From the IMG/VR virus record IMGVR_UViG_3300037805_000644, positions 158,940 to 222,939 of that record: a stretch of DNA of 64,000 nt; one strand, written 5' to 3'. The notes beneath the pieces were generated by a model. The model ran no database searches, had not been told where the DNA came from, and saw only the letters and a list, made by a program, of their open reading frames with translations. This document shows positions 23,921 to 38,810 of the stretch, piece after piece; positions within the stretch are counted from its first letter, which is position 1, and the number at the start of each line of letters is the position of its first letter. The position numbers were made by a program, and so were the translations under genes.

Positions 23921-25378
23921 TTACTGTTGTCCCCGAAGGGCCTGGCCCCTTCGGGACATGATAGAGCCGAGCCGCAGGAACTTCCTGGCCTCAACTGGAT
24001 TGGGCTGACGCCCAAAGGCGGAGGCGCAAGCCCCCAGAAAATCTCTGCCGGTACTGTACCGACTGGTCGGGCCTGCACTCAGTGCTGCCCGGTATAGGTC
24101 TCGATCAACACTAATGCCGGCTGCCTTATCCAGAGCCGCCACGCCCTCAACGAGGGCGATATCGGTGCTGGCAATGCGAGTGAGGACACCTACGGCGGCC
24201 TCACGCTGGATGGTGTCATTCGGGGCGGTCGAGTCGCCAACGGACTTGGACAGGTCTCGGCCCCGCATCTCATCTTTGATGCGCTTTTTCACACGCTGCT
24301 GCATGTGCTCGGTCAACTCATCCTCGGTCTCATCGAGCGGGGATTTCTTCTCCGCAGGGGGGGCTTCACCACCCTCCTCAGCAGCGGGGGCATCCCCTTC
24401 TTCATCATCCCAGCCGGCGAGGAAAGCATCACCGCCCAGGGAGGCGCCTGTGTGCGTCGCACGAGCAGCACGCTGCATCTGGTCCGCATTCCACTCCGGC
24501 GGTGGGGTGTTCAGCACCTTGGCAGCCTTGTCGAGCATGGCCTGAGTCGGCTCCAACACATTCCGCAGGACTGCTCCCGTGAACGCGGGAGTCTCTACCC
24601 AGCTCGCCTCGATGAACCGGACACCGCCCGTGGGGTCGATGCTCTCATGGCCACACAGCTCTGCAATCCGATGCTGGCGACCCAGCTCATCGAAAAATGC
24701 GGTGCCTTTGGCGTACTTGATGTGAGAACACATCTCGGTTTCGTCAGCGGCCCAGTGCCCGCAACGGGTGCAGACCGTGCCGTCCACGGTGCAACCCATG
24801 GACATCGTGGCCATCTTGCCGGACGTGATGGCCTTAACCAACTCGGTGTGCTTGCGGTCCGTGGCCACCAGAATGTCGATGTAGATCGAATCCCCGATGT
24901 CCCGAGCCACTGCATCAATGATGCGGCCCTTGGACTGCTCCTCAATCTGTACGTGCTCGACGAAATTGTGCCCACCCACAAACGTCTCAAATGCCTTGAG
25001 CAGGACGGGCCGGCTCCAGGCATCGAGGTTGTTGTTGATGAATTTGTCGCAGCTCTGGCGGATACGGTACTCGGCGTAACGGCGGTTGACCCGGAAGCCC
25101 CCCTCCATGACATGACCGAGCCTCACCCCTTGCGGAGACTCCACATCCACCGAGGCCACGATAGTGGCATGGGTGAGCAGGAAGTTCTCAGGGTTGAAGG
25201 GCTTGCCCAAGATTTGGGTAGCCCGCTCCACCAGGTTGGAGGACATCGCCACCTTGGTCGGGCGAAAGGATGAGGCAACCTTCCCGTGCTGCTTAGCGGC
25301 GGCTCGGACATTGCCCCATTGCTCTTTCCTGATGGAAGGGGTGGCAACACTGGCGTATGCATACTTCATCAAAGGCAT
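23921..25378 (-). CDS. prohead (capsid maturation) protease
   Basis: NNNLDAW, FVEH (His), KGRIIDA, MSMGC (Ser), CTRCG...CSH zinc insert, FIEASWVETPAF; upstream of scaffold and MCP. Confidence 0.8.
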   Translation of the reverse strand: MPLMKYAYASVATPSIRKEQWGNVRAAAKQHGKVASSFRPTKVAMSSNLVERATQILGKPFNPENFLLTHATIVASVDVESPQGVRLGHVMEGGFRVNRRYAEYRIRQSCDKFINNNLDAWSRPVLLKAFETFVGGHNFVEHVQIEEQSKGRIIDAVARDIGDSIYIDILVATDRKHTELVKAITSGKMATMSMGCTVDGTVCTRCGHWAADETEMCSHIKYAKGTAFFDELGRQHRIAELCGHESIDPTGGVRFIEASWVETPAFTGAVLRNVLEPTQAMLDKAAKVLNTPPPEWNADQMQRAARATHTGASLGGDAFLAGWDDEEGDAPAAEEGGEAPPAEKKSPLDETEDELTEHMQQRVKKRIKDEMRGRDLSKSVGDSTAPNDTIQREAAVGVLTRIASTDIALVEGVAALDKAAGISVDRDLYRAALSAGPTSRYSTGRDFLGACASAFGRQPNPVEARKFLRLGSIMSRRGQALRGQQ

Positions 25379-25380
25379 GA

Positions 25381-26001
25381 TTACATCCCCCCCATCATGC
25401 GCTGGCGGGCCAGCCGGATGCCGGAGAACGGCTGAGGGGCAGGCCCCGCAGCATCCGCATCGAAGTAATCAGGGTGACCCATGATATCGCACTTCTTCAC
25501 CAGGAACATGCACTCAGGGCACCCGAGTAGCTTCTCCCGGGCTCCATCACGCATCTTGTAAGCAGCAGGGCGGAGACACCCCATCTTGCATTTGGGGCAG
25601 GTGTAACTGCCCGTATCAAGCTCTGCTTTTGTAGCCCTGTAATTGCGGTTCTTGGCCGCCCAATACAGAGACTTTTTGACAAAAGCCTGGGCAACTCGAA
25701 GAGAGCTGGCTGCCTTCGGCCCACCGGGGACAGACACGGTTCCGGCCCCACCGGGGACGTTGTCGTGCTCTGCCTTTGGCGGGATAAGATCTTTGGGTTC
25801 GTAACGCCCCAGCTCTTCAACTGGGTAACGCTCACTCCCGTGAGGCCACTCAACATCGACCATGCCGATAGCAGGGTAAACCGCCACGACACGACCGCTG
25901 TTTTCGTAGTTGCCGCTCATGAAAGGATACACCAGGTCACCGACCCCAAACTCTGAGGCCCGCTGCTGAAAATCCACGTATGCCGAGCGGTCTTTACTCA
26001 C
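25381..26001 (-). CDS. SH3-like plus zinc-ribbon head-associated protein
   Basis: VGDLV...GRVVAV...VDVEW; tag RVAQAFVKKS; CPKC...CPEC. Confidence 0.6.
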   Translation of the reverse strand: MSKDRSAYVDFQQRASEFGVGDLVYPFMSGNYENSGRVVAVYPAIGMVDVEWPHGSERYPVEELGRYEPKDLIPPKAEHDNVPGGAGTVSVPGGPKAASSLRVAQAFVKKSLYWAAKNRNYRATKAELDTGSYTCPKCKMGCLRPAAYKMRDGAREKLLGCPECMFLVKKCDIMGHPDYFDADAAGPAPQPFSGIRLARQRMMGGM

Positions 26002-26015
26002 GTCAGTTCTCCGAA

Positions 26016-26594
26016 TCAGGCGTACAGGTTGAAGCCGTGGGCCTTCTTGCCGGACTCTTTCTCGTCGCCCTCATCCTCATCCTCATCATCCTCAGCAGAC
26101 TTGACGATCTGGGAGGCAAGGCGTAGAGCTTTGGCAACCCGGGCCTCCTCGGCGAAGCTGAGGTTGGTGCTCTGGAGAGCAGCCACGAGGCTCAGGAAGC
26201 TGGCTTGGACGCCGGCCCGTGCGGGCTGCTCCGCCATGCTCGGAGCAGCAAGGTTGCCACCCTCCACTTCCTCGCGAAGCTCCCGGTTCTCCTGCTGGGA
26301 GAACTGGCCGCCCATGTAACCGGACTCGTCGCCGTCACCCTCAAGAGGACCGCCATCCTCCCGGCCGATCTCCGAGGGATCGAAGTCAGCGTTCTTGACC
26401 TCACCCCCCTCGTCACGCTCAAGGCCAGCGGTGACCTCAATGCGGTCCGAGAGGAGGTCGCAGCGGTGGGCGAAGTCAGCAGCGATTTTCTCGGGGATCC
26501 CGAGTGCTGCGTGCTCTGCCTGAATGAGGGTGGCAACGCGATCCAAAGCGGTAGAAGCCTGGAAAGCGCCCTTCTTGGTGATACGGTTGGGCAT
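26016..26594 (-). CDS. putative internal head / core protein
   Basis: Acidic; DRVATL, KNA, RVAKALRLA, KSA and KKA sites; own late motif upstream. Confidence 0.55.
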   Translation of the reverse strand: MPNRITKKGAFQASTALDRVATLIQAEHAALGIPEKIAADFAHRCDLLSDRIEVTAGLERDEGGEVKNADFDPSEIGREDGGPLEGDGDESGYMGGQFSQQENRELREEVEGGNLAAPSMAEQPARAGVQASFLSLVAALQSTNLSFAEEARVAKALRLASQIVKSAEDDEDEDEGDEKESGKKAHGFNLYA

Positions 26595-26732: not shown

Positions 26733-29700
26733 TCACGACTTCTTACCTTTACCCTTACCGCCCGGCCCCACCTTTCTGCCGTCGTTGTGGGCCTCAACCT
26801 TCTGGTCAAGGACATCCACCTCGCCTGTCTCACAGACGTGGCGCACACGGGCGACCTGGGGGTTCAGCTTGTCCGGCGCCTTACCTGTCACCTTCTCGGC
26901 GGCGGCGTATGTAGCGCACATGTCCGTCACCTGGAGAGAGTCTGCACCGCCCTTGCATTTCTCCAGCTCTGCCTGAGTGGTTGCCTTGGCAATGCAGCCT
27001 GCCAGCTTGTCGACCGCGTCCTTGAGGGTGCGGTCATTGCCTTTCTCGGCACGTACACGCTCCGCCAAATCCTCAGGCTTTGTGGTGGGGGCTCCCTTTT
27101 CGGGCTCGTCTCCACCACCGCCAAGAGAGTTGAGGAAACCTTGCATGGTGGTCATGTCGTTGACTGCCAGCATCTTGAGCAGATCTCGGGCGAAAGCTCT
27201 CTGCTCTCCGCCCATCAGGTTGTCCTCCCCCTCATCCAGGAGGGCGGCCCCGATGGGCCCATATGCGGTGTCCTTGCTGGCGACCACCTCTACCAGATCG
27301 GCGTCCGGTAGCGAGTCCAGCGCCTCACGCACCCTAGAGCGTCCCTCAGGCCCGTAAATCTCAGACCCACCCCGGAGTAGCAGACTATGGTCCCCCTGGG
27401 CTGCTAGGGCCTGTGAGAGCACCTGGAAGCTCTTGGAGACCTCATCGGCACCGGGGAGTTGGCGACCTTGCACTGAGGCAGCTAGAACCATCCCAGACTT
27501 GATGGCGTCCAGCTCAATGAACTCGTCGGACTCTGGGTCCAGGTTGCTCAACTGATCTTCAAGCTTCCGGGCAGCGACATCCATCAGCTCTGTGCCAGCC
27601 TTGAGGAACTGCCGGAAAGCATCCTCAGCGCGAGATTGGAGCTGATCAGCGGACTTGGTGCTGTCGTTGATTGGCACCCCACCCACCAAAGAGGGATCGG
27701 ACACCACCTGCCGGGCGAACACGTACTCGGCCAGCATCTCTGCCTGAGCCTCTAGGCTCCTGTCCCCTAGGCCCTTGAGATCCTGCTTGAGTGCCTTGTT
27801 GGCGGCCTTGAACGCCTCGGCCCGGAGCCCGTCAGCAGTGAACCGACCTTCCCGAAGCTGGCTCATATGGGCAGTGTATGCCTCCGCCAGAGCAGCGGCT
27901 CCCTTCTCATCCAAATCTCGAATCAGTCGATCTGCGTCCCGAGGGAGATCCTTGGTGACCTTGCTGAAATCGTCGAGCTGACGCTCATGTTTGGCCCGCT
28001 GTTTCTCCCGAGCCTTGCCTCGGTCAGCTTTTTCCTGCTCGGCAGCGGCCTCAGGGTCGGGCTCCTCTTCCTCAGACTTGCGGTTGCCCTCGGCCATCCG
28101 CTTGGCGGCGGGCTCATCCGTGGCAGAGGTGGGCTGCTTGGCGCCCGGAGGCCAGACCCCCCACCCGTTTCGGGTTTGCCAGTAATCGCCCTCTTTCTTG
28201 TCAGCGTCTGGGGCGACCCGAGCTGCGATCCTGGTGGCCGTGGCACTGCCCCACCCGCCGACCCGCACGGCTGCGTCCTGGGCCTTCAAGTGCGTGTGGA
28301 CCCCCTTGAGGATGATCTGCTTGTTCCTCGGGGTCAGGTACGGCTCGATGTCTGGCCACTTGGAGTCCTTCAACGCCTCCCTGACGGCCATATTGAAACC
28401 CATGCCGTAACCCATGAACTCTTGAACGGAGTCCCCCACCTGGGTCACCACATCGCGCATCAGCGCCCGGACCTCTGCGGGGTGGTTGTGGTGGTGCCGC
28501 TTCAAATCTTCCATTGACCCGGAGAGATCACCCGCCGAACCCTTGCCAGACCAAACGTCTGCCGCGTGGGTCAACTCATGGGCGAGGAGACGGTACAGCT
28601 CATCCTCGATGATCCGAGTGGGACGTTGCTCGAACGACCGAAGGTAAGGGTTGACGAACACCCTCATCAGCGGACCCTCCCCACGGCGCTTGAGGAAGCC
28701 CCCGTGAAGCAATTCGTTGTTGAACGGGTCAGGGTGCCTGCGTGGGGATCCCGTCAACAGGATCTCCACATCAATCTCATTGCCCAGGACGTTGGTGATG
28801 TACAGATACTCCTGAGCAACCACCTGACCTGGCCTGGGGAGCCCCCGCTGGCGGAGTTGTAGGGCCAGCTTCTTGGAGAGGGCCTTGATCTCCCGAGTGG
28901 GCAACCGGATGGGACGGGCCGCCTGTTTGGTGGAGGCGAGATCTCGGCCCTTGGGGGCGTCGTCAGGGTTGACCACACGCACGACTTCAAGGGCACGAGG
29001 GTCGTAGGTCTGGTTGCCCACTGTGGACTGCCAACCCTCCATCCAGAAACCCACAGCGCCCTTGGCCTGCACCTCACCAGCCCAGCGGTCCACCGCCTGC
29101 ACCAACGACTCGCCCCGCTTCATCTTGCGGGGCGACCTTTTCAGATACTTGAAGCCCGGCTTAACCCGAAGCTCCAGCAACGCCCCGTGCGGGAAATAGA
29201 TCGAGGCGTCTTCTGGCTTGTCCGCCGTGGAGATCGACGGCACGCCGTGCATGAACGTGGACACATCTCCAGAGCCTCGGGGGAGCTGGAGCCCTTTCCG
29301 CAGGATCGAAGGCACCCTGTCCCACGGCGTCGCGTGGTACTGCACCCTCGGCATCTTGGCCTGTTTGGCAGCGGCCGTGCGCTCGTTGGGCAGGCAGGCA
29401 CCCACCAAAGACATCAGGAGGCTGTCTCCGGCAGCCTCGATAGCAGCGACCTTCTTGAAGTTCAGGCTGAGGTCTGAATCCTGGTCGACCCCACCACCCG
29501 CCATATCGGGGTCATCCACCTTCATCTTGTTCCGGCGGAGGTCCTGACGAGGAGGCTTCTTGGAAGGCTTCTTGCGGTTCATCCGCTCAACCTCTTCCTT
29601 CTCTTTCTCGCCCTTGTCCTTGGTGGCGGTGACCTGCTTACCCAAGCGGGCCGCCATATCCGCATACTTGAGGGGTGCCCTCTGCTTGAGGCGCCGGGGC

Positions 29701-32700
29701 TCCTCTACGAATGCCCTGAAACACTCGGCGAAATCCTCGCTGGCGTTGGTCTCCGCGTAAGCCGACACGTAAGGTTCGATGCCGTAAACCTTGAAATAAG
29801 CGTCAACACCCCGGGTCTTCTCGTCAAAAGCATGACCCAGCTCGTGGGTGAGGTACGACCGGAGAATAGGGATTGAGGTCTTACGACCTGTGCCCACCAC
29901 CAGGGCCATCACCCCCCGGGACTCCCAGGAGGCGTCCTCCGACCCTCGGCCGACACCAAACCGCACCTTCCTGACCTCTGAGGCCCACAGCTTAGCTGAG
30001 TGGCCCTTGAGAGAACCTGCGGCCCTTGTCCAGGCGTGGATATCGAGGCTCCCCTCGGAGCTGTCCAGATCCAAACCTCGGGTTTGCCAACCCTTGCCGG
30101 TGGCACTTTCAAATGCAGCCAGGGCCTCATAGTGGGTCCGCAGCTTGCGCTCCTGCTTGCGGGGCGTCCTGGGGGTTTTCACCCCCTGGATGAGGCCCAA
30201 CTCCTCAGCCGGCACCTCTGCCCTGCCCAGCCACCCCACCAACTCGACTGTGGTCATCGGCTCCTCACCCATGACCGGGTCACTCATGCGGCGGATCTTC
30301 CGCTGGAGGAGACGCACGGTCGGGCTCGAAGAACCCCACCCTGTCGGGTCGGCCAAGATGGCTTTGATGATAGCCTTGAGGTAAGGCACCGTGACCGGAG
30401 ACCCGATCCCGGCCTGCTTTGTCAGGTCCTTCAACCCGGAACAGTAAGTGGGCACCGCATAAAGGATCTGGTCGTTGTCCTGGAGCTTCACAGGAGCCCT
30501 AGACAACAGGCGCACACCTTTTGCGAAGCTGACCACCTGGGGGTTGCGGAGCACCACATCTTGCTTCCAGACAATTTCCTCGGCGTACCCATACTGGGGC
30601 AGGGTCGCTGTCTGGAACACGATCCCCACCAGCTCATCCCCGGCATCCCACCTCGTGTGGTTGGTCTGGACTCGGGGGCGGTGCTGCCCCCAAACCAGAG
30701 AGACACCACTTACGGCGTCGATCCCCATTTTCTTGTAGGGGGGCCTCATCAGGAGCTTGCCTCCTTGGATGATCTGAACGGCCCTGCTGCGGAGGGTGAA
30801 ATGGATGAACCTGTCTTTCTTGATGTCCATCAAGAAAAACCTATCCCCATACTGCTCTGCCTCCCCACACTCCAACTGCCTCAGGGGGTTGCCTTGATCC
30901 GCGTACTTCTTAGCAGGGGTTGCCTCAAACACCTCCCCATAAGGGGTGAGGATCGAACCTCTCCGCCCTCGGCGAGGGTACACGAGGCCCAGCACAGCCA
31001 GCATCCTATGGCCCTCACCTAGGTGGACAGGGTTCGGGTGTGCCGCTTGCAGCTCCAGCAACAGATTATGCATGTGCCGGGTCAGGCGCGGGGCCACCCT
31101 GGCGGTGAGCAATCCCGCCTGGGGCCCCTTAGGGTTTACCGAAGCCACACGATCACCAATCATCTTGAGGCCCTGAGGGTCGGGGCTGCTGCCGATTTTC
31201 CCCAACCACCGAGAGGCCACCCGGTGGGCCGCACCTTTCACGGGGCCATTGTCGTACACGAGCCCTAGGTGCTTCGGCTGGGCCGAAAGGCGTAGGATGA
31301 CCTCACTCTCGTGTCCGAAAGCACGGCTGTTCAGGGGGGTGTCCGGCACGCCAGGGTGTAGGAACACGTCTCCTCGCTTGACCTCGAAAGCATGTACCTG
31401 TCCCATCATCGGGTGTTCCGTGGTCAGGGAGGCCCCGCCCATCTTGGCGGCCGACTGACCGGGCTTCATGCGGCGGTACATCACCGCAGAGGGCCCGTGA
31501 GCCTTGGTGAAAGCAGCGGACACCGCCTGGTCGAAAGCTCGTTTCAGCGTGGGGTCCATCCCTGCATAGCGGCGGAAAGCCTCGGCCTTCCCCTTAGGGT
31601 CATTATAAAACACCCAGTCGGACAAGCCAGGCCACAGCTCTTCAAGGGCATCGTCCTGGGCACCGCTGGCAGCTTTGGGCACGGGGCCACCCCACACGGC
31701 ATCACCCACCGAGAAAAAGCGACGCTTCAAGGACACCCACACACCATCGGCAGCCATAGGGCTGGTCATGCCCCTGTGCCAGCAATGCTCAGGGACAAGG
31801 GCGCACCCTTGGCTGGCGGCTTTCTGCACCGCCTGGTCATAGAGCGCCTTACCCCAACCCTCACCACGGTGGTCCTCATCCACGTAAGAGCTGGTGACCA
31901 TGTACAGGCCCTTGAGGGAGGGCACCCGGGCACGCAGGTCCTCGACATCCGCTGAGCAATGCTTGGCCCTCTCGAAGGGCAGGCGCTCCATCTTCACCCC
32001 ACCAAGGATGCCTCGCTCATTCACCTCTTCCCCGTAGTCGCTGTACTCCACCACGCGCCCACGGATGAGGAAAAGAAACCCGCCGGCAGAGGACTTCACC
32101 TCGATCTTGGGCATCGCGGCCTTCTTGCTCTGGCTCAGGCTGTCGGACACCTCACCCTTGGAAAGGTACTTGTCTGCCAGACCAGGCACCAGGTACTGAC
32201 TCTTGAGGGTCGCAGGCTCATGGCCTACTGCCGCTGCGGACTCCTTGAGGGCCTGCTCAAACTCTTTCTTGAGCTTTTCCCCACGCTCTTTCTTGTCTGA
32301 GGGCAGCTTCCCGCCCTTGCTGCGGATCGCCTTGAGGCGGCTCTGCATCTCTGAGTTGGCGTGGAAGCCCCGCATGTCCTTGGCGGTGATGCCGAAAGGC
32401 TTGAGGTACGTGTTCACGTCAGAGGCGCCCACGGAACCGGTGAGGCTGTCGTTTGCACCCTTGCCCTCCTTAGCCGCCTTGAGGGCAGAGACCAGGCCCG
32501 CGTCCGTCACGACCTTGTCGTGGGACACGCCTGACTTGCCGACGTACTTGAGGGTCGCCTTGCCTCCTGAGAGGGTCAGGTGCTTGACCTTCCACCCGGT
32601 GACCCCGAAATGCCCGTCCTTGGCAGAGGAGTCGTTACCGATCCGCTCATAGGTCTCATCCATCAGCCCGACCACCAGGGCCTTGAGCCGGGTGCCTTCG

Positions 32701-33773
32701 TCCTTGGACTTGAGATCCTTCTTGACCTGGCTGCGGAGCTTGCCGATGGAGCCACGTAGTTTCTCGACCCGCTTGGCTTTCTCCCGGTTCCTGTGCTGGA
32801 CCTGACCCTCGGTGTACTCGTAAACGGTCGTGGTCCCCTTGCCGTCGGCCTTAGGGACTTCTTTTTTCTTCTGGAACTTGGCAGCGATTCGTGAAATGGC
32901 GCTCATGCTTGCTTCCTTGGCGTCTGCCTTACGGACGAAATTGATGGGGCAGGCTGGGGCCTCTGACGCGTTAGGCTCGTAGTAACCAGCGGCGGCCCCG
33001 AGGATCTTACCCCGATGACCAGCCTGCCGGAACCGGGCGGCCACTGCCTTGATCGTGGTGCCCGTCGTCACGATGTCGTCGATGATGAGCACGTCCTCGT
33101 TGGGGTCGATCCCTGCCACCGCAATAGACTGAATATGATCGTCCAGGGTGACTCCGGGGAGACCCCTCTGCCGGCGCATCCGGGAGGATTCCACGGGGGC
33201 GACTCGGGATGCCGCCGTTTCGGCGCGGGTCCCCACACCTTGGGCCACCAGGGCCTCTGCAAACCTCATCAGAGGGGGGCTTGTGCCCTTGGAGCGAGGG
33301 GCAGGTACCACCACCCCCCGAAACCCCCGCAATGCAGGGTGACTGCTCAGATGGGCTGCACACTTCCGGGCTGCTTTCGGGTCCCCATCCTTGAGTTTCT
33401 GGATCAGGTCTTGAACGCCATCGCAGTCCGGGCTGATGCCTCGGTGGTGCGTGCGGGACAGATACACAAAAGCAGCATACACCGGGACTGACCCCGCCCC
33501 TCGGGTGCGCATCTGAGATGAGACCGTCTGTACCGCTGCGGCTTTCTCAACCTGCTCCAGCTTGTCATAGTAATGAGGGTCCTCCGTCAGGTGGTCCACG
33601 GCCACCTCCCGGGCAATATCCTTGTTGTCCGTGTGCTCCATCTCGACCTTGATCCCTTTCGCCAACTGAGGAGGGTCGAAATCAGAAGGCACGCGATCAT
33701 CGCCGATCCCACCGGGCATCTGGTCCCGGTACCTGGCGGCCACCCTATCCTCTGGGCTCTTAGGACCTTTCAT
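26733..33773 (-). CDS. 2346-aa polyvalent protein: DUF5661, PRTase, topoisomerase IB, GNAT, ART (R-S-E), ART (H-type), zincin, ART (H-type), zincin, helical C-terminal region
   Basis: GIKVEMEHT..DHLTEDPHYY; VLIIDDIVTTGTT; ERIGN/GKSG/KDMR/GHEP..KSQY; VDEDHRGEGWGKALY; MYRR/ASLTT/HESEVIL; FIHFT..IIQGGKL..EEIVW; HELGH..EDFAE; YHAT..SILRKGL; HELTH..EVRA. Confidence 0.85.
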   Translation of the reverse strand: MKGPKSPEDRVAARYRDQMPGGIGDDRVPSDFDPPQLAKGIKVEMEHTDNKDIAREVAVDHLTEDPHYYDKLEQVEKAAAVQTVSSQMRTRGAGSVPVYAAFVYLSRTHHRGISPDCDGVQDLIQKLKDGDPKAARKCAAHLSSHPALRGFRGVVVPAPRSKGTSPPLMRFAEALVAQGVGTRAETAASRVAPVESSRMRRQRGLPGVTLDDHIQSIAVAGIDPNEDVLIIDDIVTTGTTIKAVAARFRQAGHRGKILGAAAGYYEPNASEAPACPINFVRKADAKEASMSAISRIAAKFQKKKEVPKADGKGTTTVYEYTEGQVQHRNREKAKRVEKLRGSIGKLRSQVKKDLKSKDEGTRLKALVVGLMDETYERIGNDSSAKDGHFGVTGWKVKHLTLSGGKATLKYVGKSGVSHDKVVTDAGLVSALKAAKEGKGANDSLTGSVGASDVNTYLKPFGITAKDMRGFHANSEMQSRLKAIRSKGGKLPSDKKERGEKLKKEFEQALKESAAAVGHEPATLKSQYLVPGLADKYLSKGEVSDSLSQSKKAAMPKIEVKSSAGGFLFLIRGRVVEYSDYGEEVNERGILGGVKMERLPFERAKHCSADVEDLRARVPSLKGLYMVTSSYVDEDHRGEGWGKALYDQAVQKAASQGCALVPEHCWHRGMTSPMAADGVWVSLKRRFFSVGDAVWGGPVPKAASGAQDDALEELWPGLSDWVFYNDPKGKAEAFRRYAGMDPTLKRAFDQAVSAAFTKAHGPSAVMYRRMKPGQSAAKMGGASLTTEHPMMGQVHAFEVKRGDVFLHPGVPDTPLNSRAFGHESEVILRLSAQPKHLGLVYDNGPVKGAAHRVASRWLGKIGSSPDPQGLKMIGDRVASVNPKGPQAGLLTARVAPRLTRHMHNLLLELQAAHPNPVHLGEGHRMLAVLGLVYPRRGRRGSILTPYGEVFEATPAKKYADQGNPLRQLECGEAEQYGDRFFLMDIKKDRFIHFTLRSRAVQIIQGGKLLMRPPYKKMGIDAVSGVSLVWGQHRPRVQTNHTRWDAGDELVGIVFQTATLPQYGYAEEIVWKQDVVLRNPQVVSFAKGVRLLSRAPVKLQDNDQILYAVPTYCSGLKDLTKQAGIGSPVTVPYLKAIIKAILADPTGWGSSSPTVRLLQRKIRRMSDPVMGEEPMTTVELVGWLGRAEVPAEELGLIQGVKTPRTPRKQERKLRTHYEALAAFESATGKGWQTRGLDLDSSEGSLDIHAWTRAAGSLKGHSAKLWASEVRKVRFGVGRGSEDASWESRGVMALVVGTGRKTSIPILRSYLTHELGHAFDEKTRGVDAYFKVYGIEPYVSAYAETNASEDFAECFRAFVEEPRRLKQRAPLKYADMAARLGKQVTATKDKGEKEKEEVERMNRKKPSKKPPRQDLRRNKMKVDDPDMAGGGVDQDSDLSLNFKKVAAIEAAGDSLLMSLVGACLPNERTAAAKQAKMPRVQYHATPWDRVPSILRKGLQLPRGSGDVSTFMHGVPSISTADKPEDASIYFPHGALLELRVKPGFKYLKRSPRKMKRGESLVQAVDRWAGEVQAKGAVGFWMEGWQSTVGNQTYDPRALEVVRVVNPDDAPKGRDLASTKQAARPIRLPTREIKALSKKLALQLRQRGLPRPGQVVAQEYLYITNVLGNEIDVEILLTGSPRRHPDPFNNELLHGGFLKRRGEGPLMRVFVNPYLRSFEQRPTRIIEDELYRLLAHELTHAADVWSGKGSAGDLSGSMEDLKRHHHNHPAEVRALMRDVVTQVGDSVQEFMGYGMGFNMAVREALKDSKWPDIEPYLTPRNKQIILKGVHTHLKAQDAAVRVGGWGSATATRIAARVAPDADKKEGDYWQTRNGWGVWPPGAKQPTSATDEPAAKRMAEGNRKSEEEEPDPEAAAEQEKADRGKAREKQRAKHERQLDDFSKVTKDLPRDADRLIRDLDEKGAAALAEAYTAHMSQLREGRFTADGLRAEAFKAANKALKQDLKGLGDRSLEAQAEMLAEYVFARQVVSDPSLVGGVPINDSTKSADQLQSRAEDAFRQFLKAGTELMDVAARKLEDQLSNLDPESDEFIELDAIKSGMVLAASVQGRQLPGADEVSKSFQVLSQALAAQGDHSLLLRGGSEIYGPEGRSRVREALDSLPDADLVEVVASKDTAYGPIGAALLDEGEDNLMGGEQRAFARDLLKMLAVNDMTTMQGFLNSLGGGGDEPEKGAPTTKPEDLAERVRAEKGNDRTLKDAVDKLAGCIAKATTQAELEKCKGGADSLQVTDMCATYAAAEKVTGKAPDKLNPQVARVRHVCETGEVDVLDQKVEAHNDGRKVGPGGKGKGKKS

Positions 33774-36700
33774 ACTGGCTCCACCTTGAGGATCTTGACT
33801 TTGCGGGGATCGAACAGAGCCACCTCAGGGACACCGTCGACAAGGCCAGAGCCGTGGAAAACCACGCAATCATAGCCGTTCTTCCGGGCCTTGCGGGCCT
33901 GCTCTTTGCGGGCGGTGACCAAGACGTTCTGTGCCTTCACCATTACGGTGTACACCTTGGGTCGGTATTTCGCAGAGTCGAGGCCCAAGGTGTCCAGGGA
34001 GTCATAAACGTACTCGGGCAACCCAGTGCCCTGGCTGAACAGGGAGCCCCCAGCGGGGGGCGGCTCAACCTTACTGCCCAGAATGTATCCTGCAATGTCG
34101 TTCAGATCGTTGGGGTCCATGTCGCCCATGAGAGCGTCGATGTCCTCTCCGGTCGTGAGGTTGTTGGTGGCCATCCAGTGGTCCCACCCTTTCCCGTGCC
34201 CCAAGTCGAACATGCTTTGGAGTAGGCTCCCCCCGCCCTTGTTCAGCCTCGCCAGCTCAGCAATGATCGAGACGGGGAACCCAATGTTCCTGTTTGCATC
34301 GGCATACCGGACAGCGACCCGCTTTGAGGGGGTCAGGAAAATGCCCTTGCCGTAAAACTTGGACACCAGGTCATCCCGGGATTGCGCCATGTCGAAGGCC
34401 CGGAACGACCGGGTGGTGCCGTGGTAAAGGATCGTGCCCGCCCCCGACACAAGCCCTTCCAAGCCTTCCTGTTTGAGATCGATATTGGCAACACGGGTCA
34501 GGTACTGACTCGCCACACGGGCGGCGGCCTTTTTCCTGGCGCGGCCCTCGTCAAAGCGAAGCTTGAACAGCCTCACATCTTTCTTCTTGGTCTTGCCGTC
34601 CTTGTCAGGCTCGGTCTCGACCACCACCATCGGGTCACCCTTGGGTCCCTTCTTGAAATCGACGATGTAACCCTTGCTGTTGAGATATTTCCCGGTAAGA
34701 ACGGGGTCACCGAGGTTCAACGTGAACGACTTGGCTACCCGGGCTGCCGCCACTTTCTCATCACGGGACAGCCTCATGAGGGGCTTCCCATAAAGACCCG
34801 ACAGGCTCAGGGCTCGCTGCATCCGAAACTTCCCCATTTCGGACAGGCGTCCGGGAGCTGCCATGAAGGCAACGAAAGACTCCGCGAAATCCTCCCTCTC
34901 GTTGGTCTTGGCATACTCAGTCGGAACCTGGAGGGCTTCGAGAGCCTGGGCCACGGCACTATCATCTTGGGCGTAAGCAGCCACCTGCTCCTTGGTGAGT
35001 GTGGGGTGGGTGAAAGACTCCACCCCTGTTGCACCCAATGTGCTCTTCACCTGGCGAAACACTCGGTCCATTCTTCTCTGATAATCACTTTCCCCCGGGG
35101 AAGTCCCATAATCTTCGGACAGGAGTCTCACAGGATCGGATAGGAGTCGGTGCATGCGCACCCCACGATCTCGGTTCCAGCGGAGTTGTTTCGGCGTAAC
35201 AAAAGGGCCTCCTGCTAGAGGCTCATGCAGCCAGGCGTGGAACTTCATCCTGTCGAGCCCCCGAAGGCGGATACCCCGCAGGTTACCCTCGGATTCCTCC
35301 AACAGGCCCCAGAACCTCATACGTTCCGGGAGGGAGACCCCTCGGATGTCCTTTTCGGTCTGTGCATCGACCTTCTCTGCCTCCTGGACAGGAATCCACC
35401 CGGAGTCCCACTCCTTGCGGGCTTCGGGGTGCATGAGGGTCAGGTGAAAGTGATGACCCACCTCATGGAGAAAGATCTCGTGGATCCACTCCCGGAGCAT
35501 CCGCCCATCCACCCTTCCCGCAGCCGCAGTGAGGAGCTGGATACGCCCCCGGTCGCCATACCACCCGTGAGCAGTCTCTCCCTCAGAGCTGTGTCGGATG
35601 ATGATGGTGTGTACCGTCTCGTGGAGCAGAGGGGTTACACCCCTCTGCTTGAACAGGCCCACCACATAATCCACACCGGATAGGAACTTTCGGATCGTGG
35701 GTTCGGGAAGGCGGTCGGGGTTCTGAACGGAAAAACCCTGGTATTTGAAACGCCGCACTCCCGCCTGCCTGGCAAAGCTATTGAGCTGATCAGCATAAGA
35801 ATCAAGGGCAGTGAGGAGCACCTGAACCCGGTAAGTCAGGGTCACCCCCTCTCCCACCACAAGGCTGGTGTGGAATTTGACAGACTTGAAAAGGTCTCCT
35901 GCCGCATCCCGAACACGCCTACGGATGCTGTAATCGATGGCATCCCGTCCAAGGGATCGAAGAACCCAGCCGCCAAAAGGCCGCCCAAAATGCAGGGGGT
36001 GTGCTCCAGGCTGGCTGAGGGCGTGGGGGAACCCATCCTCTTGCAGTTTCTCCCGCAGCTTTCCCTCAGGGACGCGGCTCAGGCCCTTGAACCGTGCGTG
36101 AATCTTACTGAAAGCAACCAGCTCTTTGGAGATCTCTTTCCAATCAGCATCCGCCTGTGCCGGACCTTTCCAGACATAGCGAAGAGCCTCCCGTGCCACC
36201 TTTGCCGATCCAGCCTTGAGCTTGTGGGTCTTGGGCATCCCCCAGATCTCGATCTCGTCGAAAGTCCAGCTCCCCGTGGGGGTGACGCCACCGAACTCAG
36301 CCTCCAGGCCATCCAGGTAATCCAGGGTGGTGTGGGGGCGGTAAACCGTATAGCTGTCCCCTACCTCAATGCCCAAGTCTTGTACGGCGCTCTTGAGGCG
36401 GTCCCGCAGCTCTGCCATCCGGTGGCTGAACCGGATAGGCAGGATGGCCACACGACGCTCTTCGGCCGGGTGGGTGAAGTAATCGAGACCTTCAAGGTTC
36501 GCAGTGACCGGCTCACGCAGCTCCTCCGACACCACCCGCTGACAGGTGGAGACGAACTCAGCCTCCCTGCCCTTGACGTTCCCGACATAGAGCAGCGTGA
36601 TGTGGGGCGGCGACTTATCGTTGCCGGATTGCTTCTTGGGAAACTGATCGGCCAGGTGGCGGGGGAGAGGGATGAACAGACCTGTCCACTCGGTGGAGTC

Positions 36701-36808
36701 ACCGGTGGTCTTGCCGTCACTGGGTCCGGCGGACCTGTCCGCCCAGGCCGCAGCTACCTGCTTGACCGCCAAACGCCTTACCTGTGCTCGAAGGATGGGG
36801 TGATCCAC
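33770..36808 (-). CDS. 1012-aa polyvalent protein: 2H phosphoesterase, zincin, SH3-like barrel, ART-PolyVal-like
   Basis: PHITLLY and YRPHTTLDY; HEVGH...YAKTNEREDFAE; GDPVLTGKY..KGYI; LYHGT..F..F, GKGIFLT, GYDCV, EVALFDP. ATGA overlap with the 2346-aa gene. Confidence 0.85.
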   Translation of the reverse strand: MDHPILRAQVRRLAVKQVAAAWADRSAGPSDGKTTGDSTEWTGLFIPLPRHLADQFPKKQSGNDKSPPHITLLYVGNVKGREAEFVSTCQRVVSEELREPVTANLEGLDYFTHPAEERRVAILPIRFSHRMAELRDRLKSAVQDLGIEVGDSYTVYRPHTTLDYLDGLEAEFGGVTPTGSWTFDEIEIWGMPKTHKLKAGSAKVAREALRYVWKGPAQADADWKEISKELVAFSKIHARFKGLSRVPEGKLREKLQEDGFPHALSQPGAHPLHFGRPFGGWVLRSLGRDAIDYSIRRRVRDAAGDLFKSVKFHTSLVVGEGVTLTYRVQVLLTALDSYADQLNSFARQAGVRRFKYQGFSVQNPDRLPEPTIRKFLSGVDYVVGLFKQRGVTPLLHETVHTIIIRHSSEGETAHGWYGDRGRIQLLTAAAGRVDGRMLREWIHEIFLHEVGHHFHLTLMHPEARKEWDSGWIPVQEAEKVDAQTEKDIRGVSLPERMRFWGLLEESEGNLRGIRLRGLDRMKFHAWLHEPLAGGPFVTPKQLRWNRDRGVRMHRLLSDPVRLLSEDYGTSPGESDYQRRMDRVFRQVKSTLGATGVESFTHPTLTKEQVAAYAQDDSAVAQALEALQVPTEYAKTNEREDFAESFVAFMAAPGRLSEMGKFRMQRALSLSGLYGKPLMRLSRDEKVAAARVAKSFTLNLGDPVLTGKYLNSKGYIVDFKKGPKGDPMVVVETEPDKDGKTKKKDVRLFKLRFDEGRARKKAAARVASQYLTRVANIDLKQEGLEGLVSGAGTILYHGTTRSFRAFDMAQSRDDLVSKFYGKGIFLTPSKRVAVRYADANRNIGFPVSIIAELARLNKGGGSLLQSMFDLGHGKGWDHWMATNNLTTGEDIDALMGDMDPNDLNDIAGYILGSKVEPPPAGGSLFSQGTGLPEYVYDSLDTLGLDSAKYRPKVYTVMVKAQNVLVTARKEQARKARKNGYDCVVFHGSGLVDGVPEVALFDPRKVKILKVEPV

Positions 36809-36845: not shown

Positions 36846-36859
36846 ATAGGCTGATCACA
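36846..36859 (-). promoter_or_regulatory. putative late promoter motif within an inverted repeat
   Basis: Minus strand TGT-gatca-GCCTAT, about 38 nt upstream of 36808; part of the CAGCCTATACCC/GGGTATAGGCTG inverted repeat (36823-36853). Confidence 0.55.
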
Positions 36860-38810
36860 GCACTGCGGGCTTGAAACCCTTGAGCCGGGCCTCCAGGCTC
36901 GCAAGCCTGGAGGACATCTCTTGCCACTCATCCCGCAGCTTACCCTCAGTGCTTGCCAGGGCAGCCTTCTTGTGGGGGATGTCGGACTCAAGCTTGGACT
37001 GGAGGTCTCGGTCGAGGTACCCGTCGGAGGACAGAGCCTCGGAGGCTGTCTCTCGAATGGCCTCCTTGAGGAGGACCTTGAAGTTCTCCTGCACCTCCGG
37101 CGTGATGCCCTTGGAGGCGAAGCGGGACATGCCCTCTTCTTTCGGCTTGGCGTAGTTGAGCCCCAAGACCTCAGCAGCCCTCTGGGTGGCGTCCGTGGAC
37201 TCTGCCAGGGCATCTCCCACGCGGCTGTAAACCGAGCGCAGCACCTCATTGAAGGTGGCGTCCTGGAGGGTGAACGTGTCCCGCTCCAGCTTCTCCCGGA
37301 CCGTGTCTGCGTCCAGGTTGAGCAGGTCCAGGATGGTCTCGATATCCAACGAGCCCTTCTGGTACAGGTTGAACAGGGCGTCAAAGGTCTCCTGGTTGTC
37401 CCGCAAGGCAAGGCGGGTGAACGACAGGCGGGGATGCACCACAACCTCAAGGCCGTCTTCGTCAACCTCCATGAAGCCCATACGGCGACACATCGGCTCC
37501 AGAAGCTGCTTGTCCACGAAATCCTGGAGGAGTTCCCGCAAGAGCATGTACCGGACGTTGATCACCTCCAGGTGGATGCGGTCGCCGCTGTAGCTCGACT
37601 CACCGGAGAGCAAAGACTCTGTCACACCGAGGCCCGCATAGAGCTGGCGGTCTGTGAGATCGTACTCACCCGACAGGTCCAGGAGGCGGTTGTCTGCACC
37701 CATCTCCTCCCAGTTGACCTGGAAGTTGGTGATGACGCTGTGGTCAGGATCCTGGAGGGCCAGGTCTACCTGGTCCCGTAGCTCCTCGGTGTCGTTGGCG
37801 TCCATATCCTCAGCCCAGATGAGCCGGTAAGGGGTCATGTGGCGAGAGGCGATGGAGGTCTGGGCCTGCCGGAGCTTGTCTCGGTACACCAGGGTGCGGA
37901 GGCACCGCTGGAGGATCGACTTGCCCCGAGGCTCGTACTGGCTTTTCTTACGGGCCATGAAATGACAAAAGCTGCCGGCATTCGGGTTCGTGTTGAGAGG
38001 GATCTCCTCGCCTCGGAGAACGTAATCAACGACCTCAACAGGCATCGTCTCCACAACCTCGCGGGCCCTCATGTCGCCCTGAGCGGCGCGGTCGATAACG
38101 TCCTTGGTCAGGGAGTCTGGGATGAGGCTTAGGAGCACCTGATCTGTGAAAGGGAAAGCCTCCATCACGACCTGCTCAGGAGGAAGCACCCGAAGGGCTG
38201 TCCAGCCCTGGTAGTTCTCCTTGACCCACTGAACCATGCGTTTCTGTGCGTCGGGGTACTCCCGCTCTTCTTCCTTCAAAGAGCCGTCGGCTGCGATTTC
38301 GCGGTACGTCTCGTGCGTCACGCTCCGAGGCATGTCAGGGCTTGTGTCCTCGGCGAAAATGTTCACCTCACCGATGAGGAAATACTCGTGGACAATCTCC
38401 AATAGGCGGTGAAGCAAGCCCACCTCCCGAGCCCACCGCTCAACGAACCGCATGGCGGCATCCGCCATTTTCTTGTTCTTGGTCCGGGGCTTGCGGAATC
38501 GAAGCTTGCTCAGTGGCAGCTCGCCATGGAGATCGATGGCCTGGCCTACGAAAGGATCATTGTCGTAGAAAAAGCGGAAATAGTTCCGCATCTCGGCAGT
38601 GGACTGGGGCAGCTCCAGGAAGTCCGGGCTCAGCTCAGGGCTGTAAAAGTTACCGCCCGAGCCCGTCATCGTCCCCCCCGCCTGGGGGAACGCCATCTTC
38701 ATCATCTTTGAGGTGCCTGTGACCGTGCGGCGAGGCTTACCCGTCTTGACGTTAGCCCTCTCGGGGAGAGTCGCCACTCGTACGGTGTGTTTGGGATTGT
38801 TCTTCTTCAT
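36855..38810 (-). CDS. portal protein
   Basis: FFYDNDPFVGQAIDLH, EYFLIGEV, RGKSILQRC..LVYRDKLRQAQ; downstream of the terminase. Confidence 0.85.
   Translation of the reverse strand: MKKNNPKHTVRVATLPERANVKTGKPRRTVTGTSKMMKMAFPQAGGTMTGSGGNFYSPELSPDFLELPQSTAEMRNYFRFFYDNDPFVGQAIDLHGELPLSKLRFRKPRTKNKKMADAAMRFVERWAREVGLLHRLLEIVHEYFLIGEVNIFAEDTSPDMPRSVTHETYREIAADGSLKEEEREYPDAQKRMVQWVKENYQGWTALRVLPPEQVVMEAFPFTDQVLLSLIPDSLTKDVIDRAAQGDMRAREVVETMPVEVVDYVLRGEEIPLNTNPNAGSFCHFMARKKSQYEPRGKSILQRCLRTLVYRDKLRQAQTSIASRHMTPYRLIWAEDMDANDTEELRDQVDLALQDPDHSVITNFQVNWEEMGADNRLLDLSGEYDLTDRQLYAGLGVTESLLSGESSYSGDRIHLEVINVRYMLLRELLQDFVDKQLLEPMCRRMGFMEVDEDGLEVVVHPRLSFTRLALRDNQETFDALFNLYQKGSLDIETILDLLNLDADTVREKLERDTFTLQDATFNEVLRSVYSRVGDALAESTDATQRAAEVLGLNYAKPKEEGMSRFASKGITPEVQENFKVLLKEAIRETASEALSSDGYLDRDLQSKLESDIPHKKAALASTEGKLRDEWQEMSSRLASLEARLKGFKPAVL

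What the first reader, a model, noticed from the sequence alone, without database searches (positions are those of the whole stretch)
32120..32906. Type IB topoisomerase catalytic core embedded in a phage head polyprotein
The full vaccinia/bacterial TopIB pentad is visible: ERIGN (Arg), GKSG (Lys), KDMR (Arg), VGHEP (His), KSQY (Tyr, codon at 32195-32193). TopIB is established in eukaryotes, poxviruses, mimiviruses and some bacteria, and the vaccinia enzyme is packaged to support early transcription. I regard it as unusual in a tailed phage head module. The domain starts with its own Met preceded by AAGGAAG, so it may be a once-independent gene or have an internal start. Inference: it relaxes DNA during packaging or straight after injection.
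Basis: partly seen in the sequence, partly recalled or inferred. Interest (0 to 1): 0.75.

Follow-up and report, generated by a model that had tools for sequence, protein, structure and literature searches.

The report
Topoisomerase IB inside huge-phage head protein
A real, apparently active type IB DNA topoisomerase domain sits inside a 2,346-residue multi-enzyme protein encoded between the portal and prohead-protease genes of a marine huge phage; hundreds of related huge phages carry the same domain, mostly in this packaging/head gene block, which suggests an undescribed virion- or packaging-linked DNA swivel.

Summary
Residues ~290-551 of a 2,346-aa ORF (26733-33773, minus strand) match Pfam Topoisom_I at E 5.5e-26. 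All five catalytic residues (R377, K413, R468, H518, Y527) align with poxvirus TopIB. An AlphaFold model (pLDDT 87) hits only TopIB structures first; tyrosine recombinases and telomere resolvase score far worse.

The host protein is best called a polyvalent protein: DUF5661, a PRTase-like region, TopIB, GNAT, two HExxH zincin motifs and a conserved C-terminal helical domain. The gene order is terminase, portal, polyvalent protein 1, this protein, two small genes, prohead protease.

It is not a one-off. About 563 clusters (50% identity) share this TopIB at E<=1e-30. At least 224 are giant proteins with shuffled partner domains. 63 of 80 IMG/VR loci place the gene beside head genes, and in some lineages a solo gene overlaps the terminase stop codon.

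The domain is as conserved as portal and terminase, so it looks like a core function. Most likely it is an ATP-independent swivel acting on the phage genome at packaging or entry. Packaging into virions, proteolytic processing and an internal start are not shown. I found no description of TopIB in polyvalent or head-module proteins, so I rate it a new variant of a known kind.

The parts
26733..33773 (-). Single 2,346-aa ORF (P0002), a polyvalent protein that holds the TopIB domain. Its ATG overlaps the TGA of the upstream 1,012-aa gene (ATGA).
32130..32894 (-). TopIB domain as conserved across the family (aa 294-548).
   Evidence: Pfam PF01028 E 5.5e-26; PDB sequence hits; 49-sequence alignment at 53-76% identity; AF2 model pLDDT 86.8; Foldseek top 22 hits all TopIB
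32643..32645 (-). Arg377 (ERIGN), equivalent to vaccinia R130
32535..32537 (-). Lys413 (VGKSG), equivalent to vaccinia K167
32370..32372 (-). Arg468 (KDMRG), equivalent to vaccinia R223
32220..32222 (-). His518 (VGHEP), equivalent to vaccinia H265
32193..32195 (-). Tyr527 (KSQY), the predicted nucleophile, equivalent to vaccinia Y274
32814..32822 (-). Y318-E-Y320 in the beta-hairpin that is all that remains of the N-terminal domain. It aligns with variola Y70/Y72 and is invariant in the family.
33543..33671 (-). DUF5661 domain (aa 35-77)
   Evidence: Pfam E 1.3e-10, above cut-off
33015..33119 (-). PRTase-like core (aa 219-253). The match is just under the cut-off. The whole region aa ~90-285 is contiguous with TopIB in several relatives.
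31791..31907 (-). GNAT acetyltransferase core (aa 623-661)
   Evidence: PF00583 24.2 bits vs cut-off 20.7 when scanned as a segment
29832..29846 (-). First HExxH zincin motif (HELGH, aa 1310-1314), with weak metallopeptidase matches
29442..29627 (-). Conserved charged linear motif (aa 1383-1444, KKKPPRxDLRR...DKDLSLNYK), shared by 64 relatives
28566..28580 (-). Second HExxH motif (HELTH, aa 1732-1736)
26769..28241 (-). Conserved C-terminal all-helical domain (aa 1845-2335). It lies at or near the C-terminus in the 39 relatives aligned. No structural relative was found. It is a candidate capsid-incorporation module (inference).
33770..36808 (-). Upstream 1,012-aa polyvalent protein: 2H/2'-5' RNA-ligase-like phosphoesterase plus ART-PolyVal
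36855..38819 (-). Portal protein
   Evidence: phrog_16240 E 1.4e-25; 57-70% identity to syntenic genes in relatives
39445..41397 (-). Large terminase
   Evidence: phrog_2 E 1.4e-22
23921..25378 (-). Prohead maturation protease
   Evidence: phrog_18299 E 4.6e-14
25381..26594 (-). Two small conserved genes (206 aa and 192 aa) that always follow the polyvalent gene in relatives

Best explanation
Residues ~290-551 of the 2,346-aa protein are a catalytically competent type IB topoisomerase, that is, an ATP- and Mg-independent nicking-closing swivel that works through a 3'-phosphotyrosyl intermediate at Tyr527. Its N-terminal DNA-binding domain is reduced to a single beta-hairpin.

The domain is built into a polyvalent protein of the head gene block of a marine huge phage. 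The record is 223 kb and about 42% complete by CheckV.

I infer four further steps. The protein enters the procapsid, probably through its conserved C-terminal helical domain and/or the conserved charged motif. It may be cut into pieces by its own zincin-like domains or by the prohead protease. The TopIB part then acts on the phage's own very long genome, releasing torsional stress while DNA is packaged and/or as it enters the cell. That would allow early transcription and replication to start without waiting for host topoisomerases, much as the virion-packaged vaccinia TopIB does.

Shown: domain identity, intact active site, fold, gene position, family-wide conservation and linkage to head genes. 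Inferred: enzyme activity, packaging, processing and the stage at which it acts.
For: Identity: Pfam E 5.5e-26. The pentad aligns to variola and D. radiodurans TopIB and is invariant in 49 homologues. The AF2 model has pLDDT 86.8. The top 22 Foldseek PDB hits are all TopIB, led by variola at E 7e-13, TMq 0.70.

Head context: the order is TerL, small gene, portal, polyvalent 1, this gene, two small genes, protease. The same order occurs in LR745208.1 and in three contigs of 332-531 kb.

Family: 2,671 representative clusters at E<=1e-3 and 563 at E<=1e-30. At least 224 proteins of 1.3-3.4 kaa carry this TopIB alongside varying partners such as PolyA_pol, 2H, RNA ligase, ART-PolyVal, NUDIX, PAP2, InPase and inteins.

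Linkage: in 63 of 80 IMG/VR loci the TopIB ORF lies beside head genes. Large ORFs lie between portal and protease. Solo ORFs of ~349 aa lie directly after TerL and before portal, with a 4-nt overlap with the TerL stop in L068. In 10 of 15 portal-anchored loci that show both portal and protease, TopIB lies between them.

Rate of change: TopIB is 50-82% identical between phages whose portal is 57-70% and TerL 52-56% identical. The C-terminal domain is only 20-32% identical and the partner domains are swapped. That pattern fits a core function better than a fast-evolving anti-defence effector.

Literature: Iyer et al. 2017 (PMC5512222) inferred that phage polyvalent proteins next to portal/terminase genes are packaged and injected, and that they help to 'jump-start transcription or replication'.

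From my own knowledge, not checked here: vaccinia TopIB is packaged in virions and its loss lowers early transcription.
Against: There is no direct evidence that the protein is in virions; gene position is only circumstantial.

17 of 80 IMG/VR loci have the TopIB gene (272-1,118 aa) with no head gene within 10 kb (L006 and L007). One portal subclade lacks TopIB between portal and protease. The head linkage is therefore frequent but not universal.

Iyer et al. 2021 (PMC7824862) treat solo jumbo-phage TopIB as an ordinary DNA-topology enzyme.

The C-terminal domain has no detectable similarity to MuF or to any known head-incorporation module.

The reduced N-terminal domain could weaken DNA clamping.

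No other topoisomerase was found in the record, but only 42% of the genome is present.
Confidence: 0.55

Rival explanations
1. It is an ordinary intracellular replication/transcription/recombination topoisomerase that merely happens to be encoded in the late region and fused to other enzymes. It is not packaged and acts in the cytoplasm on replicating phage DNA.
For: Solo genes of the same clade sit among small non-structural genes in L006 and L007. 17 of 80 loci have no head gene nearby. Iyer et al. 2021 list solo TopIB of phiRSL1, Lu11, PaBG, Motura and NCTB under DNA topology functions.
Against: 63 of 80 loci keep the gene inside the TerL-portal-protease block, even when it is solo and overlapping the TerL stop. 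The fusion partners are typical injected-effector domains: ART-PolyVal, 2H, GNAT and PRTase. A conserved C-terminal module accompanies it in about 70% of the giant relatives.
Confidence: 0.2
2. It is an anti-host or tethering device and not a genome swivel. After injection it would nick or relax host DNA to shut down host transcription or defence. Alternatively it would clamp, perhaps covalently, onto the phage DNA so that the attached effector domains travel into the cell with the genome.
For: Polyvalent proteins are viewed as arrays of conflict effectors that often include a DNA-binding handle such as ArdC-N. TopIB chemistry makes a covalent protein-DNA link. TopIB is the one constant domain among shuffled effectors.
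Against: Conservation is as slow as for portal and TerL, and the complete religation-competent pentad is kept. Neither feature is typical of toxins. Solo 260-350 aa versions have nothing to tether. CCCTT sites are neither depleted nor notably enriched in the phage genome.
Confidence: 0.15
3. The TopIB part is made as a separate protein from an internal start at Met290 (32906), so it is not functionally part of the large protein.
For: AAGGAAG lies 5 nt upstream of the ATG. Met290 coincides with the domain boundary and with the N-terminus of relatives that begin with TopIB, such as P0080, P0087 and P0120. In L008 the domain is a separate 288-aa gene in the same slot.
Against: 19 of 56 in-frame ATGs have SD-like 4-mers, and four have stronger motifs. 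No Met is conserved at this alignment column (consensus). The PRTase-TopIB junction is contiguous in independent relatives such as P0036, P0013, P0016 and P0098. No RNA run was listed.
Confidence: 0.1
4. It is a tyrosine recombinase or telomere resolvase and not a topoisomerase.
For: The catalytic fold and chemistry are shared. Weak Foldseek hits to XerH, lambda Int, Cre and TelK exist.
Against: All 22 hits at E<=1e-3 are TopIB, at E 7e-13 to 1e-6 and TMq up to 0.70. Recombinases begin at E 7e-3 with TMq <=0.40, TelK is at E 0.23 and ResT at 0.73. The Pfam and PDB sequence matches are to TopIB only.
Confidence: 0.02

Closest known systems
Poxvirus TopIB (vaccinia/variola; PDB 2h7f, 2h7g, 3igc, 1a41)
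   Same: It is the best sequence and fold match, at E 5.9e-12 and TMq 0.70. It has the same R-K-R-H-Y pentad. The Y-x-Y of the N-domain hairpin aligns with Y70/Y72. The catalytic domain is similarly small. From my own knowledge, the pox enzyme is packaged in the virion, which parallels the function proposed here.
   Different: Identity is only ~21-22%. The five-stranded N-terminal domain is reduced to one hairpin plus a low-confidence helix. The domain is embedded in a 2,346-aa multi-enzyme protein instead of standing as a 314-aa enzyme. The host virus is a tailed phage.
Bacterial poxvirus-like TopIB (Deinococcus radiodurans, PDB 2f4q/3m4a; P. aeruginosa enzyme, PMC2666729)
   Same: Same family and same pentad, with E 1.7e-9 and Foldseek E 1.8e-10. 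It is prokaryotic.
   Different: It is a cellular stand-alone enzyme with a full N-domain. It is not linked to virion genes, and the match is weaker than to the pox enzyme.
Solo TopIB of cultured jumbo phages (phiRSL1, Lu11, PaBG, Motura, NCTB in Iyer et al. 2021, PMC7824862; 668-aa 'topoisomerase' of Xanthomonas phages PhiXhv-12/15/16 and Erwinia phage Ep032)
   Same: These are phage-encoded TopIB. The PhiXhv/Ep032 proteins match at ~32% identity and lie near a connector gene.
   Different: They are much more distant than the metagenomic clade, which is 53-82% identical. They are described as DNA-topology enzymes, not as head-module or polyvalent components. phiRSL1, Lu11 and PaBG were not even recovered by tblastn at E<=1e-5.
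Polyvalent proteins of phages and conjugative elements (Iyer et al. 2017, PMC5512222)
   Same: Many unrelated enzymatic domains sit in one giant polypeptide, encoded next to portal and terminase. The hallmark domains occur in this protein or its neighbour: ART-PolyVal, 2H, PRTase, GNAT and zincin-like peptidases. The predicted role is to be packaged and injected to jump-start infection.
   Different: TopIB and the tyrosine-recombinase superfamily are not among the domains named in that paper's main text. No MuF domain was detected here. In its place there is a clade-specific C-terminal helical domain and a charged linear motif.

Membership tests
Type IB topoisomerase (Pfam PF01028 Topoisom_I) | Significant match to the family profile above the curated cut-off | tested here: met
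   91.8 bits vs cut-off 23.7, E 5.5e-26; 97.3 bits on the six-frame genome search
Type IB topoisomerase (Pfam PF01028 Topoisom_I) | Catalytic pentad Arg-Lys-Arg-His-Tyr in register with vaccinia R130/K167/R223/H265/Y274 | tested here: met
   The phmmer alignment to variola TopIB places R377, K413, R468, H518 and Y527 on those residues. All five are invariant in 49 homologues.
Type IB topoisomerase (Pfam PF01028 Topoisom_I) | TopIB catalytic-domain fold, distinguishable from tyrosine recombinases and telomere resolvases | tested here: met
   The model has pLDDT 86.8. The top 22 Foldseek hits are all TopIB. Recombinases score E>=7e-3 and TelK 0.23.
Type IB topoisomerase (Pfam PF01028 Topoisom_I) | N-terminal beta-sheet domain that completes the C-shaped clamp around duplex DNA | tested here: inconclusive
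   Only one beta-hairpin (aa ~302-319) plus a low-confidence helix precedes the catalytic domain. The alignment to variola starts at its residue 62. The Y-x-Y DNA-contact motif is kept and invariant.
Type IB topoisomerase (Pfam PF01028 Topoisom_I) | ATP/Mg-independent relaxation through a covalent 3'-phosphotyrosyl intermediate | not testable with these tools
   This needs a biochemical assay. The attempt to model a DNA complex was not folded by the tool.
Polyvalent proteins (Iyer et al. 2017) | Two or more unrelated enzymatic or effector domains in one polypeptide of a phage or conjugative element | tested here: met
   DUF5661, TopIB and GNAT are above cut-offs. The PRTase-like region and two zincin-like regions are sub-threshold. 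The record is an IMG/VR virus record.
Polyvalent proteins (Iyer et al. 2017) | In phages: encoded with the portal-terminase packaging and head genes | tested here: met
   The gene lies between portal and prohead protease. The same holds in most related loci.
Polyvalent proteins (Iyer et al. 2017) | Presence of family-typical domains (ART-PolyVal, 2H, PRTase, GNAT, MPTase, MuF) | tested here: inconclusive
   ART-PolyVal and 2H are above cut-off in the adjacent gene. GNAT is above cut-off in this protein. The PRTase and MPTase matches are weak. No MuF was detected.
Polyvalent proteins (Iyer et al. 2017) | Packaged in the virion and delivered into the host with the DNA | not testable with these tools
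   No virion proteome exists for this uncultured clade, and no RNA run was listed.
Tyrosine recombinase / telomere resolvase | Best sequence and fold match to integrase, Xer, Cre or TelK/ResT families | tested here: not met
   There are no Pfam integrase hits. The Foldseek matches are weak, with TMq <=0.40.

The most novel reading that the evidence does not exclude
TopIB is a core, portal-proximal part of the packaging and ejection apparatus of a large lineage of huge phages (contigs up to ~620 kb). On this reading it is a built-in DNA swivel, carried either as a terminase-coupled solo protein or as the constant domain of the head-internal polyvalent protein. It would make spooling and ejecting a 400-700 kb genome topologically feasible. 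Possibly it also holds the effector array on the leading DNA through its covalent intermediate. That would be a new class of phage virion enzyme and a bacterial-virus counterpart of the poxvirus core topoisomerase.
Probability: 0.22. Interest if true: 0.85.

Novelty: new variant of a known kind. Interest (0 to 1): 0.62.

Why it matters
TopIB is textbook for eukaryotes, poxviruses, mimivirus and some bacteria. In phages it has been mentioned only as a sporadic solo DNA-topology gene. Here it turns out to be the constant, slowly evolving domain of a very large family of huge-phage proteins, and it is tied to the terminase-portal-protease block.

If these enzymes are packaged, three things follow. 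First, phages would have a virion topoisomerase that parallels vaccinia's. Second, there would be a concrete answer to how torsional stress is handled when half-megabase genomes are packaged and ejected. Third, the catalogue of domains delivered by polyvalent proteins would gain a DNA-topology activity.

The hypothesis is directly testable: a relaxation assay with a Y527F control, and virion proteomics on any cultured relative. The family would also supply compact (~260 aa) TopIB enzymes with a minimal N-domain.

Tried and rejected
- **DNA complex.** Complex prediction of the TopIB domain with a 28-bp CCCTT duplex from the window was not folded by the tool, so it gives no evidence either way.
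- **C-terminal domain.** I found no Pfam match, no ESM Atlas hit, and no Foldseek match in PDB or BFVD at E<0.1 despite pLDDT 90. Its role as a capsid-targeting module stays an inference.
- **ART-like look of aa 1465-1615.** It shows no similarity to the neighbour's ART-PolyVal region and no Pfam hit, so I left it unassigned.
- **CCCTT frequency.** The observed/expected ratio is 1.4-1.5, which is within the 5-95% range of 5-mers of the same composition. This is uninformative.
- **Other topoisomerases.** The 223-kb record has no hit for type IA, GyrA/ParC or GyrB families, but it is only ~42% complete.
- **RNA evidence for an internal start.** No RNA run was listed.
- **Independent read support.** Apart from the probable source run, the seawater DNA runs hold only short identical contig pieces, and none bridges 32906. 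Independent support for the PRTase-TopIB junction therefore comes only from relatives with the same contiguous junction.
- **Bacterial genomes.** Only 3 MAG contigs matched, and I take these to be probably mis-binned phage. There is no clear host signal.
- **Prohead-protease cleavage motifs.** I considered searching for them at domain borders. I did not pursue it because the protease specificity in this clade is unknown and short A/S/G-x-E-type motifs are expected by chance.
- **PHROGs.** The scan of the whole protein and of the TopIB part gave nothing useful.
Full report

Yes. The stretch 32120-32906 (minus strand) translates without stops into 262 residues that contain ERIGN, GKSG, KDMRG, VGHEP and KSQY. 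These are residues 290-551 of one continuous 2,346-aa ORF, 26733-33773 minus.

Pfam Topoisom_I (PF01028) matches residues 326-525 at E 5.5e-26, with 91.8 bits against a curated cut-off of 23.7. Against PDB sequences the best matches are variola TopIB (E 5.9e-12), Deinococcus radiodurans TopIB (1.7e-9) and human Top1 (~1e-7). The printed alignments put R377, K413, R468, H518 and Y527 on variola R130, K167, R223, H265 and Y274.

**2. Fold**

An AlphaFold2 model built on a 49-sequence family alignment has mean pLDDT 86.8. In Foldseek against the PDB, the 22 matches at E<=1e-3 are all TopIB, with variola at E 7e-13 and TMq 0.70. Tyrosine recombinases begin only at E 7e-3 with TMq <=0.40. TelK scores 0.23 and ResT 0.73.

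There is one structural difference from the known enzymes. Before the catalytic domain the model has only a low-confidence helix and a single beta-hairpin, and the alignment to variola starts at its residue 62. The usual five-stranded N-domain is thus reduced. The Y-x-Y of that hairpin, which aligns with variola Y70/Y72, is invariant.

**3. What the protein and its surroundings are**

The window is the last 64 kb of a 222,939-bp IMG/VR virus record that CheckV estimates to be 42% complete. GC content is 61%. The sequence occurs in seawater metagenomes.

On the minus strand the gene order is:
- large terminase (39445-41397);
- a small gene;
- portal (36855-38819);
- a 1,012-aa protein with a 2H phosphoesterase and ART-PolyVal (33770-36808);
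- the TopIB protein;
- two small genes;
- prohead protease (23921-25378).

Besides TopIB, the protein carries the following:
- DUF5661;
- a PRTase-like region just under the cut-off;
- a GNAT core;
- two HExxH motifs with weak zincin matches;
- a conserved charged linear motif at aa 1383-1444;
- a conserved C-terminal helical domain at aa ~1845-2335.

This is the architecture and genomic context that Iyer et al. 2017 (PMC5512222) call polyvalent proteins. They infer that such proteins are packaged and injected, possibly after processing by embedded zincin-like peptidases. 'Polyprotein' is therefore a reasonable guess, but it is not shown.

**4. It is a big family**

A full HMMER scan of 1.84 billion cluster representatives gives 2,671 hits at E<=1e-3 and 563 at E<=1e-30. 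The top 150 are 53-82% identical to this domain and range from 272 to 3,381 aa.

Restricting candidates to giant proteins finds at least 224, on contigs up to 531 kb. TopIB is the constant domain. The partners vary and include PolyA_pol in roughly 49 of the 120 listed, plus 2H, RNA ligase, cREC_REC, DUF5661, ART-PolyVal, NUDIX, PAP2, GGACT, InPase and inteins.

Mapping all 119 relatives onto this protein shows three shared blocks:
- TopIB, present in all by selection;
- the charged motif, in up to about 70;
- the C-terminal domain, in up to about 88. It lies at or near the C-terminus in the 39 relatives aligned and is only 20-32% identical outside the two closest relatives.

The same TopIB clade also exists as solo genes of 260-460 aa on contigs of 200-570 kb.

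**5. Linkage to the packaging/head module**

The TerL-portal-(polyvalent)-small-small-protease order, followed further on by a 290-aa protein that is 83-90% identical, recurs in LR745208.1 and in three metagenomic contigs of 332-531 kb. In LR745208.1, a 485-kb uncultured phage, TopIB lies in a 508-aa ORF just downstream of the portal gene.

An IMG/VR scan found 148 relatives, and I examined the best 80.
- In 63 of them the TopIB ORF lies beside head genes.
- ORFs of roughly 690-3,100 aa lie between portal and protease.
- A group of ~344-356-aa solo ORFs lies directly after TerL and before portal. In L068 the solo gene overlaps the TerL stop codon by 4 nt.
- In L008 a 288-aa solo TopIB occupies the polyvalent slot, next to a NUMOD3 homing-endonuclease-like gene. 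This looks like a split version of the large gene.
- Seventeen loci have no head gene within 10 kb.

When I anchored on the portal instead, 10 of the 15 loci that show both portal and protease have TopIB between them. One subclade does not.

**6. Solo versus fused**

I built a FastTree of 47 solo and 61 fused domains. It splits into a mainly solo group (41 solo, 6 fused) and a mainly fused group (55 fused, 6 solo). Parsimony needs 9 changes of state, at least 6 of them forced by well-supported branches, against a shuffled mean of 35. The window's domain sits in a supported set of 31 fused and 1 solo.

So fusion and fission happened repeatedly. The caveats are that this is FastTree only, with a midpoint root, and that the rows were chosen by similarity to the query.

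**7. Internal start**

AAGGAAG does precede Met290. However, 19 of the 56 in-frame ATGs have SD-like 4-mers, and four have stronger motifs. No Met is conserved at that alignment column. The PRTase-TopIB junction is contiguous in independent relatives. No RNA run was listed. The idea is therefore untested and carries no special support.

**8. Mechanism**

Three things are shown: the active site is intact and invariant, the fold is TopIB, and the gene sits in the head module in most relatives. The domain is also as conserved as portal and terminase. TopIB is 50-82% identical between phages whose portal is 57-70% and TerL 52-56% identical, while the neighbouring domains are swapped.

This pattern argues for a core function on the phage's own DNA and against a fast-evolving anti-defence effector. 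I therefore favour an ATP-independent swivel that is incorporated into the head, or that works with the packaging machinery. It would relieve torsional stress during packaging and/or on entry, giving the very long genome immediate topological competence. This parallels the virion TopIB of vaccinia; that parallel is from my own knowledge and was not checked here.

Packaging, processing and timing are all inferences. The rivals are an ordinary cytoplasmic topoisomerase, an anti-host or tethering role, a separate internal-start product, and a recombinase or resolvase. Each is weighed in its own section of this report.

**9. Novelty**

The polyvalent-protein paper names no TopIB or tyrosine-recombinase-fold domain in its main text, and its supplements were not available. 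The jumbo-phage survey mentions solo TopIB in five phages as a DNA-topology enzyme. Searches for TopIB with terminase and portal, for DUF5661, and for huge phages with polyvalent proteins found nothing relevant. JGI automatic annotation does label some of these proteins 'DNA topoisomerase IB', so the domain call itself is not new. What appears undescribed is its role as the constant domain of a huge-phage polyvalent family and its tie to the packaging/head block. I rate this a new variant of a known kind.

**10. Limits**

- All relatives are uncultured.
- The record is partial.
- The C-terminal domain has no recognisable relative.
- The DNA-complex modelling was not run by the tool.
- Independent read support for the exact junction is lacking.
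- No phylogeny against pox, mimivirus and bacterial enzymes could be built with the sequences available.

Noticed in passing
window 33770-36808 (-): A second polyvalent protein (1,012 aa) lies immediately upstream, with a 2H/2'-5' RNA-ligase-like phosphoesterase (E 1.5e-11) and ART-PolyVal (E 1.6e-8). Its TGA overlaps the ATG of the TopIB gene (ATGA), which suggests translational coupling.
   Followed up: partly
window 29442-29627 (-), aa 1383-1444 of the TopIB protein: A conserved charged linear motif (consensus about KKKPPRxDLRR...DxD...DKDLSLNYKxVA) is present in 64 giant relatives. It usually lies just before the C-terminal domain. In this protein a ~390-aa insert separates the two. Its function is unknown; it is a candidate targeting or cleavage signal.
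   Followed up: partly
window 26769-28241 (-), aa 1845-2335: The C-terminal domain is predicted with high confidence (pLDDT 90) and is almost all-helical with a small N-terminal beta unit. It has no match in PDB, BFVD, Pfam or the ESM Atlas. It lies at or near the C-terminus in the 39 relatives aligned.
   Followed up: yes
window 20574-21446 (-): This 290-aa protein is 83-90% identical across huge phages whose portal and terminase are only 52-70% identical. A relative carries a weak Phage_capsid_4 mark. That is unusually strong conservation for a head-module protein.
   Followed up: no
L004 6650-9928 and 20951-24289; L005 15515-18520; L003 844-3477: In related huge phages, inteins or LAGLIDADG elements interrupt the portal, the prohead protease and polyvalent proteins. 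Seven of the 120 listed TopIB giants carry Intein_splicing/LAGLIDADG_3. No such Pfam match was seen in the window's own portal, protease or TopIB protein.
   Followed up: no
L068 7965-11017; also L045-47, L061, L067, L069, L070, L075, L082, L084, L088, L090: In one lineage a solo TopIB of ~349 aa follows the large terminase gene directly and precedes four small ORFs and the portal. In L068, the only locus where I listed the ORFs, its start overlaps the terminase stop by 4 nt.
   Followed up: partly
L008 6604-15185: The polyvalent slot appears split into a 1,134-aa protein (2H plus PolyA_pol), a 288-aa solo TopIB, a 255-aa NUMOD3 homing-endonuclease-like gene and a 1,186-aa protein. This may be gene fission linked to a homing endonuclease.
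   Followed up: no
window 50700-52109 and 55948-57150 (-): Clamp-loader (phrog_5846, E 4.9e-50) and sliding-clamp-like (phrog_947) genes lie here, so a replication module follows the head/packaging block in the window.
   Followed up: no
window 46240-47487 (-): This 415-aa ORF has a borderline Pectinesterase match (27.9 bits vs cut-off 27). It may be a beta-helix depolymerase or fibre-like protein.
   Followed up: no
L124 (Xanthomonas phage PhiXhv-15, record 191173-193179): Cultured jumbo phages of ~228 kb (PhiXhv-12/15/16, Erwinia Ep032, Xanthomonas Ep026) encode a 668-aa 'topoisomerase' with a distant TopIB domain (~32% identity). In PhiXhv-15 it lies about 2.7 kb upstream of a head-tail connector gene. 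This is a possible experimental model for virion proteomics.
   Followed up: partly
L006 15446-17659: A 737-aa ORF with a weak Cas12f1-like_TNB (TnpB-type) mark lies about 5 kb from a solo TopIB gene in a 246-kb phage contig.
   Followed up: no
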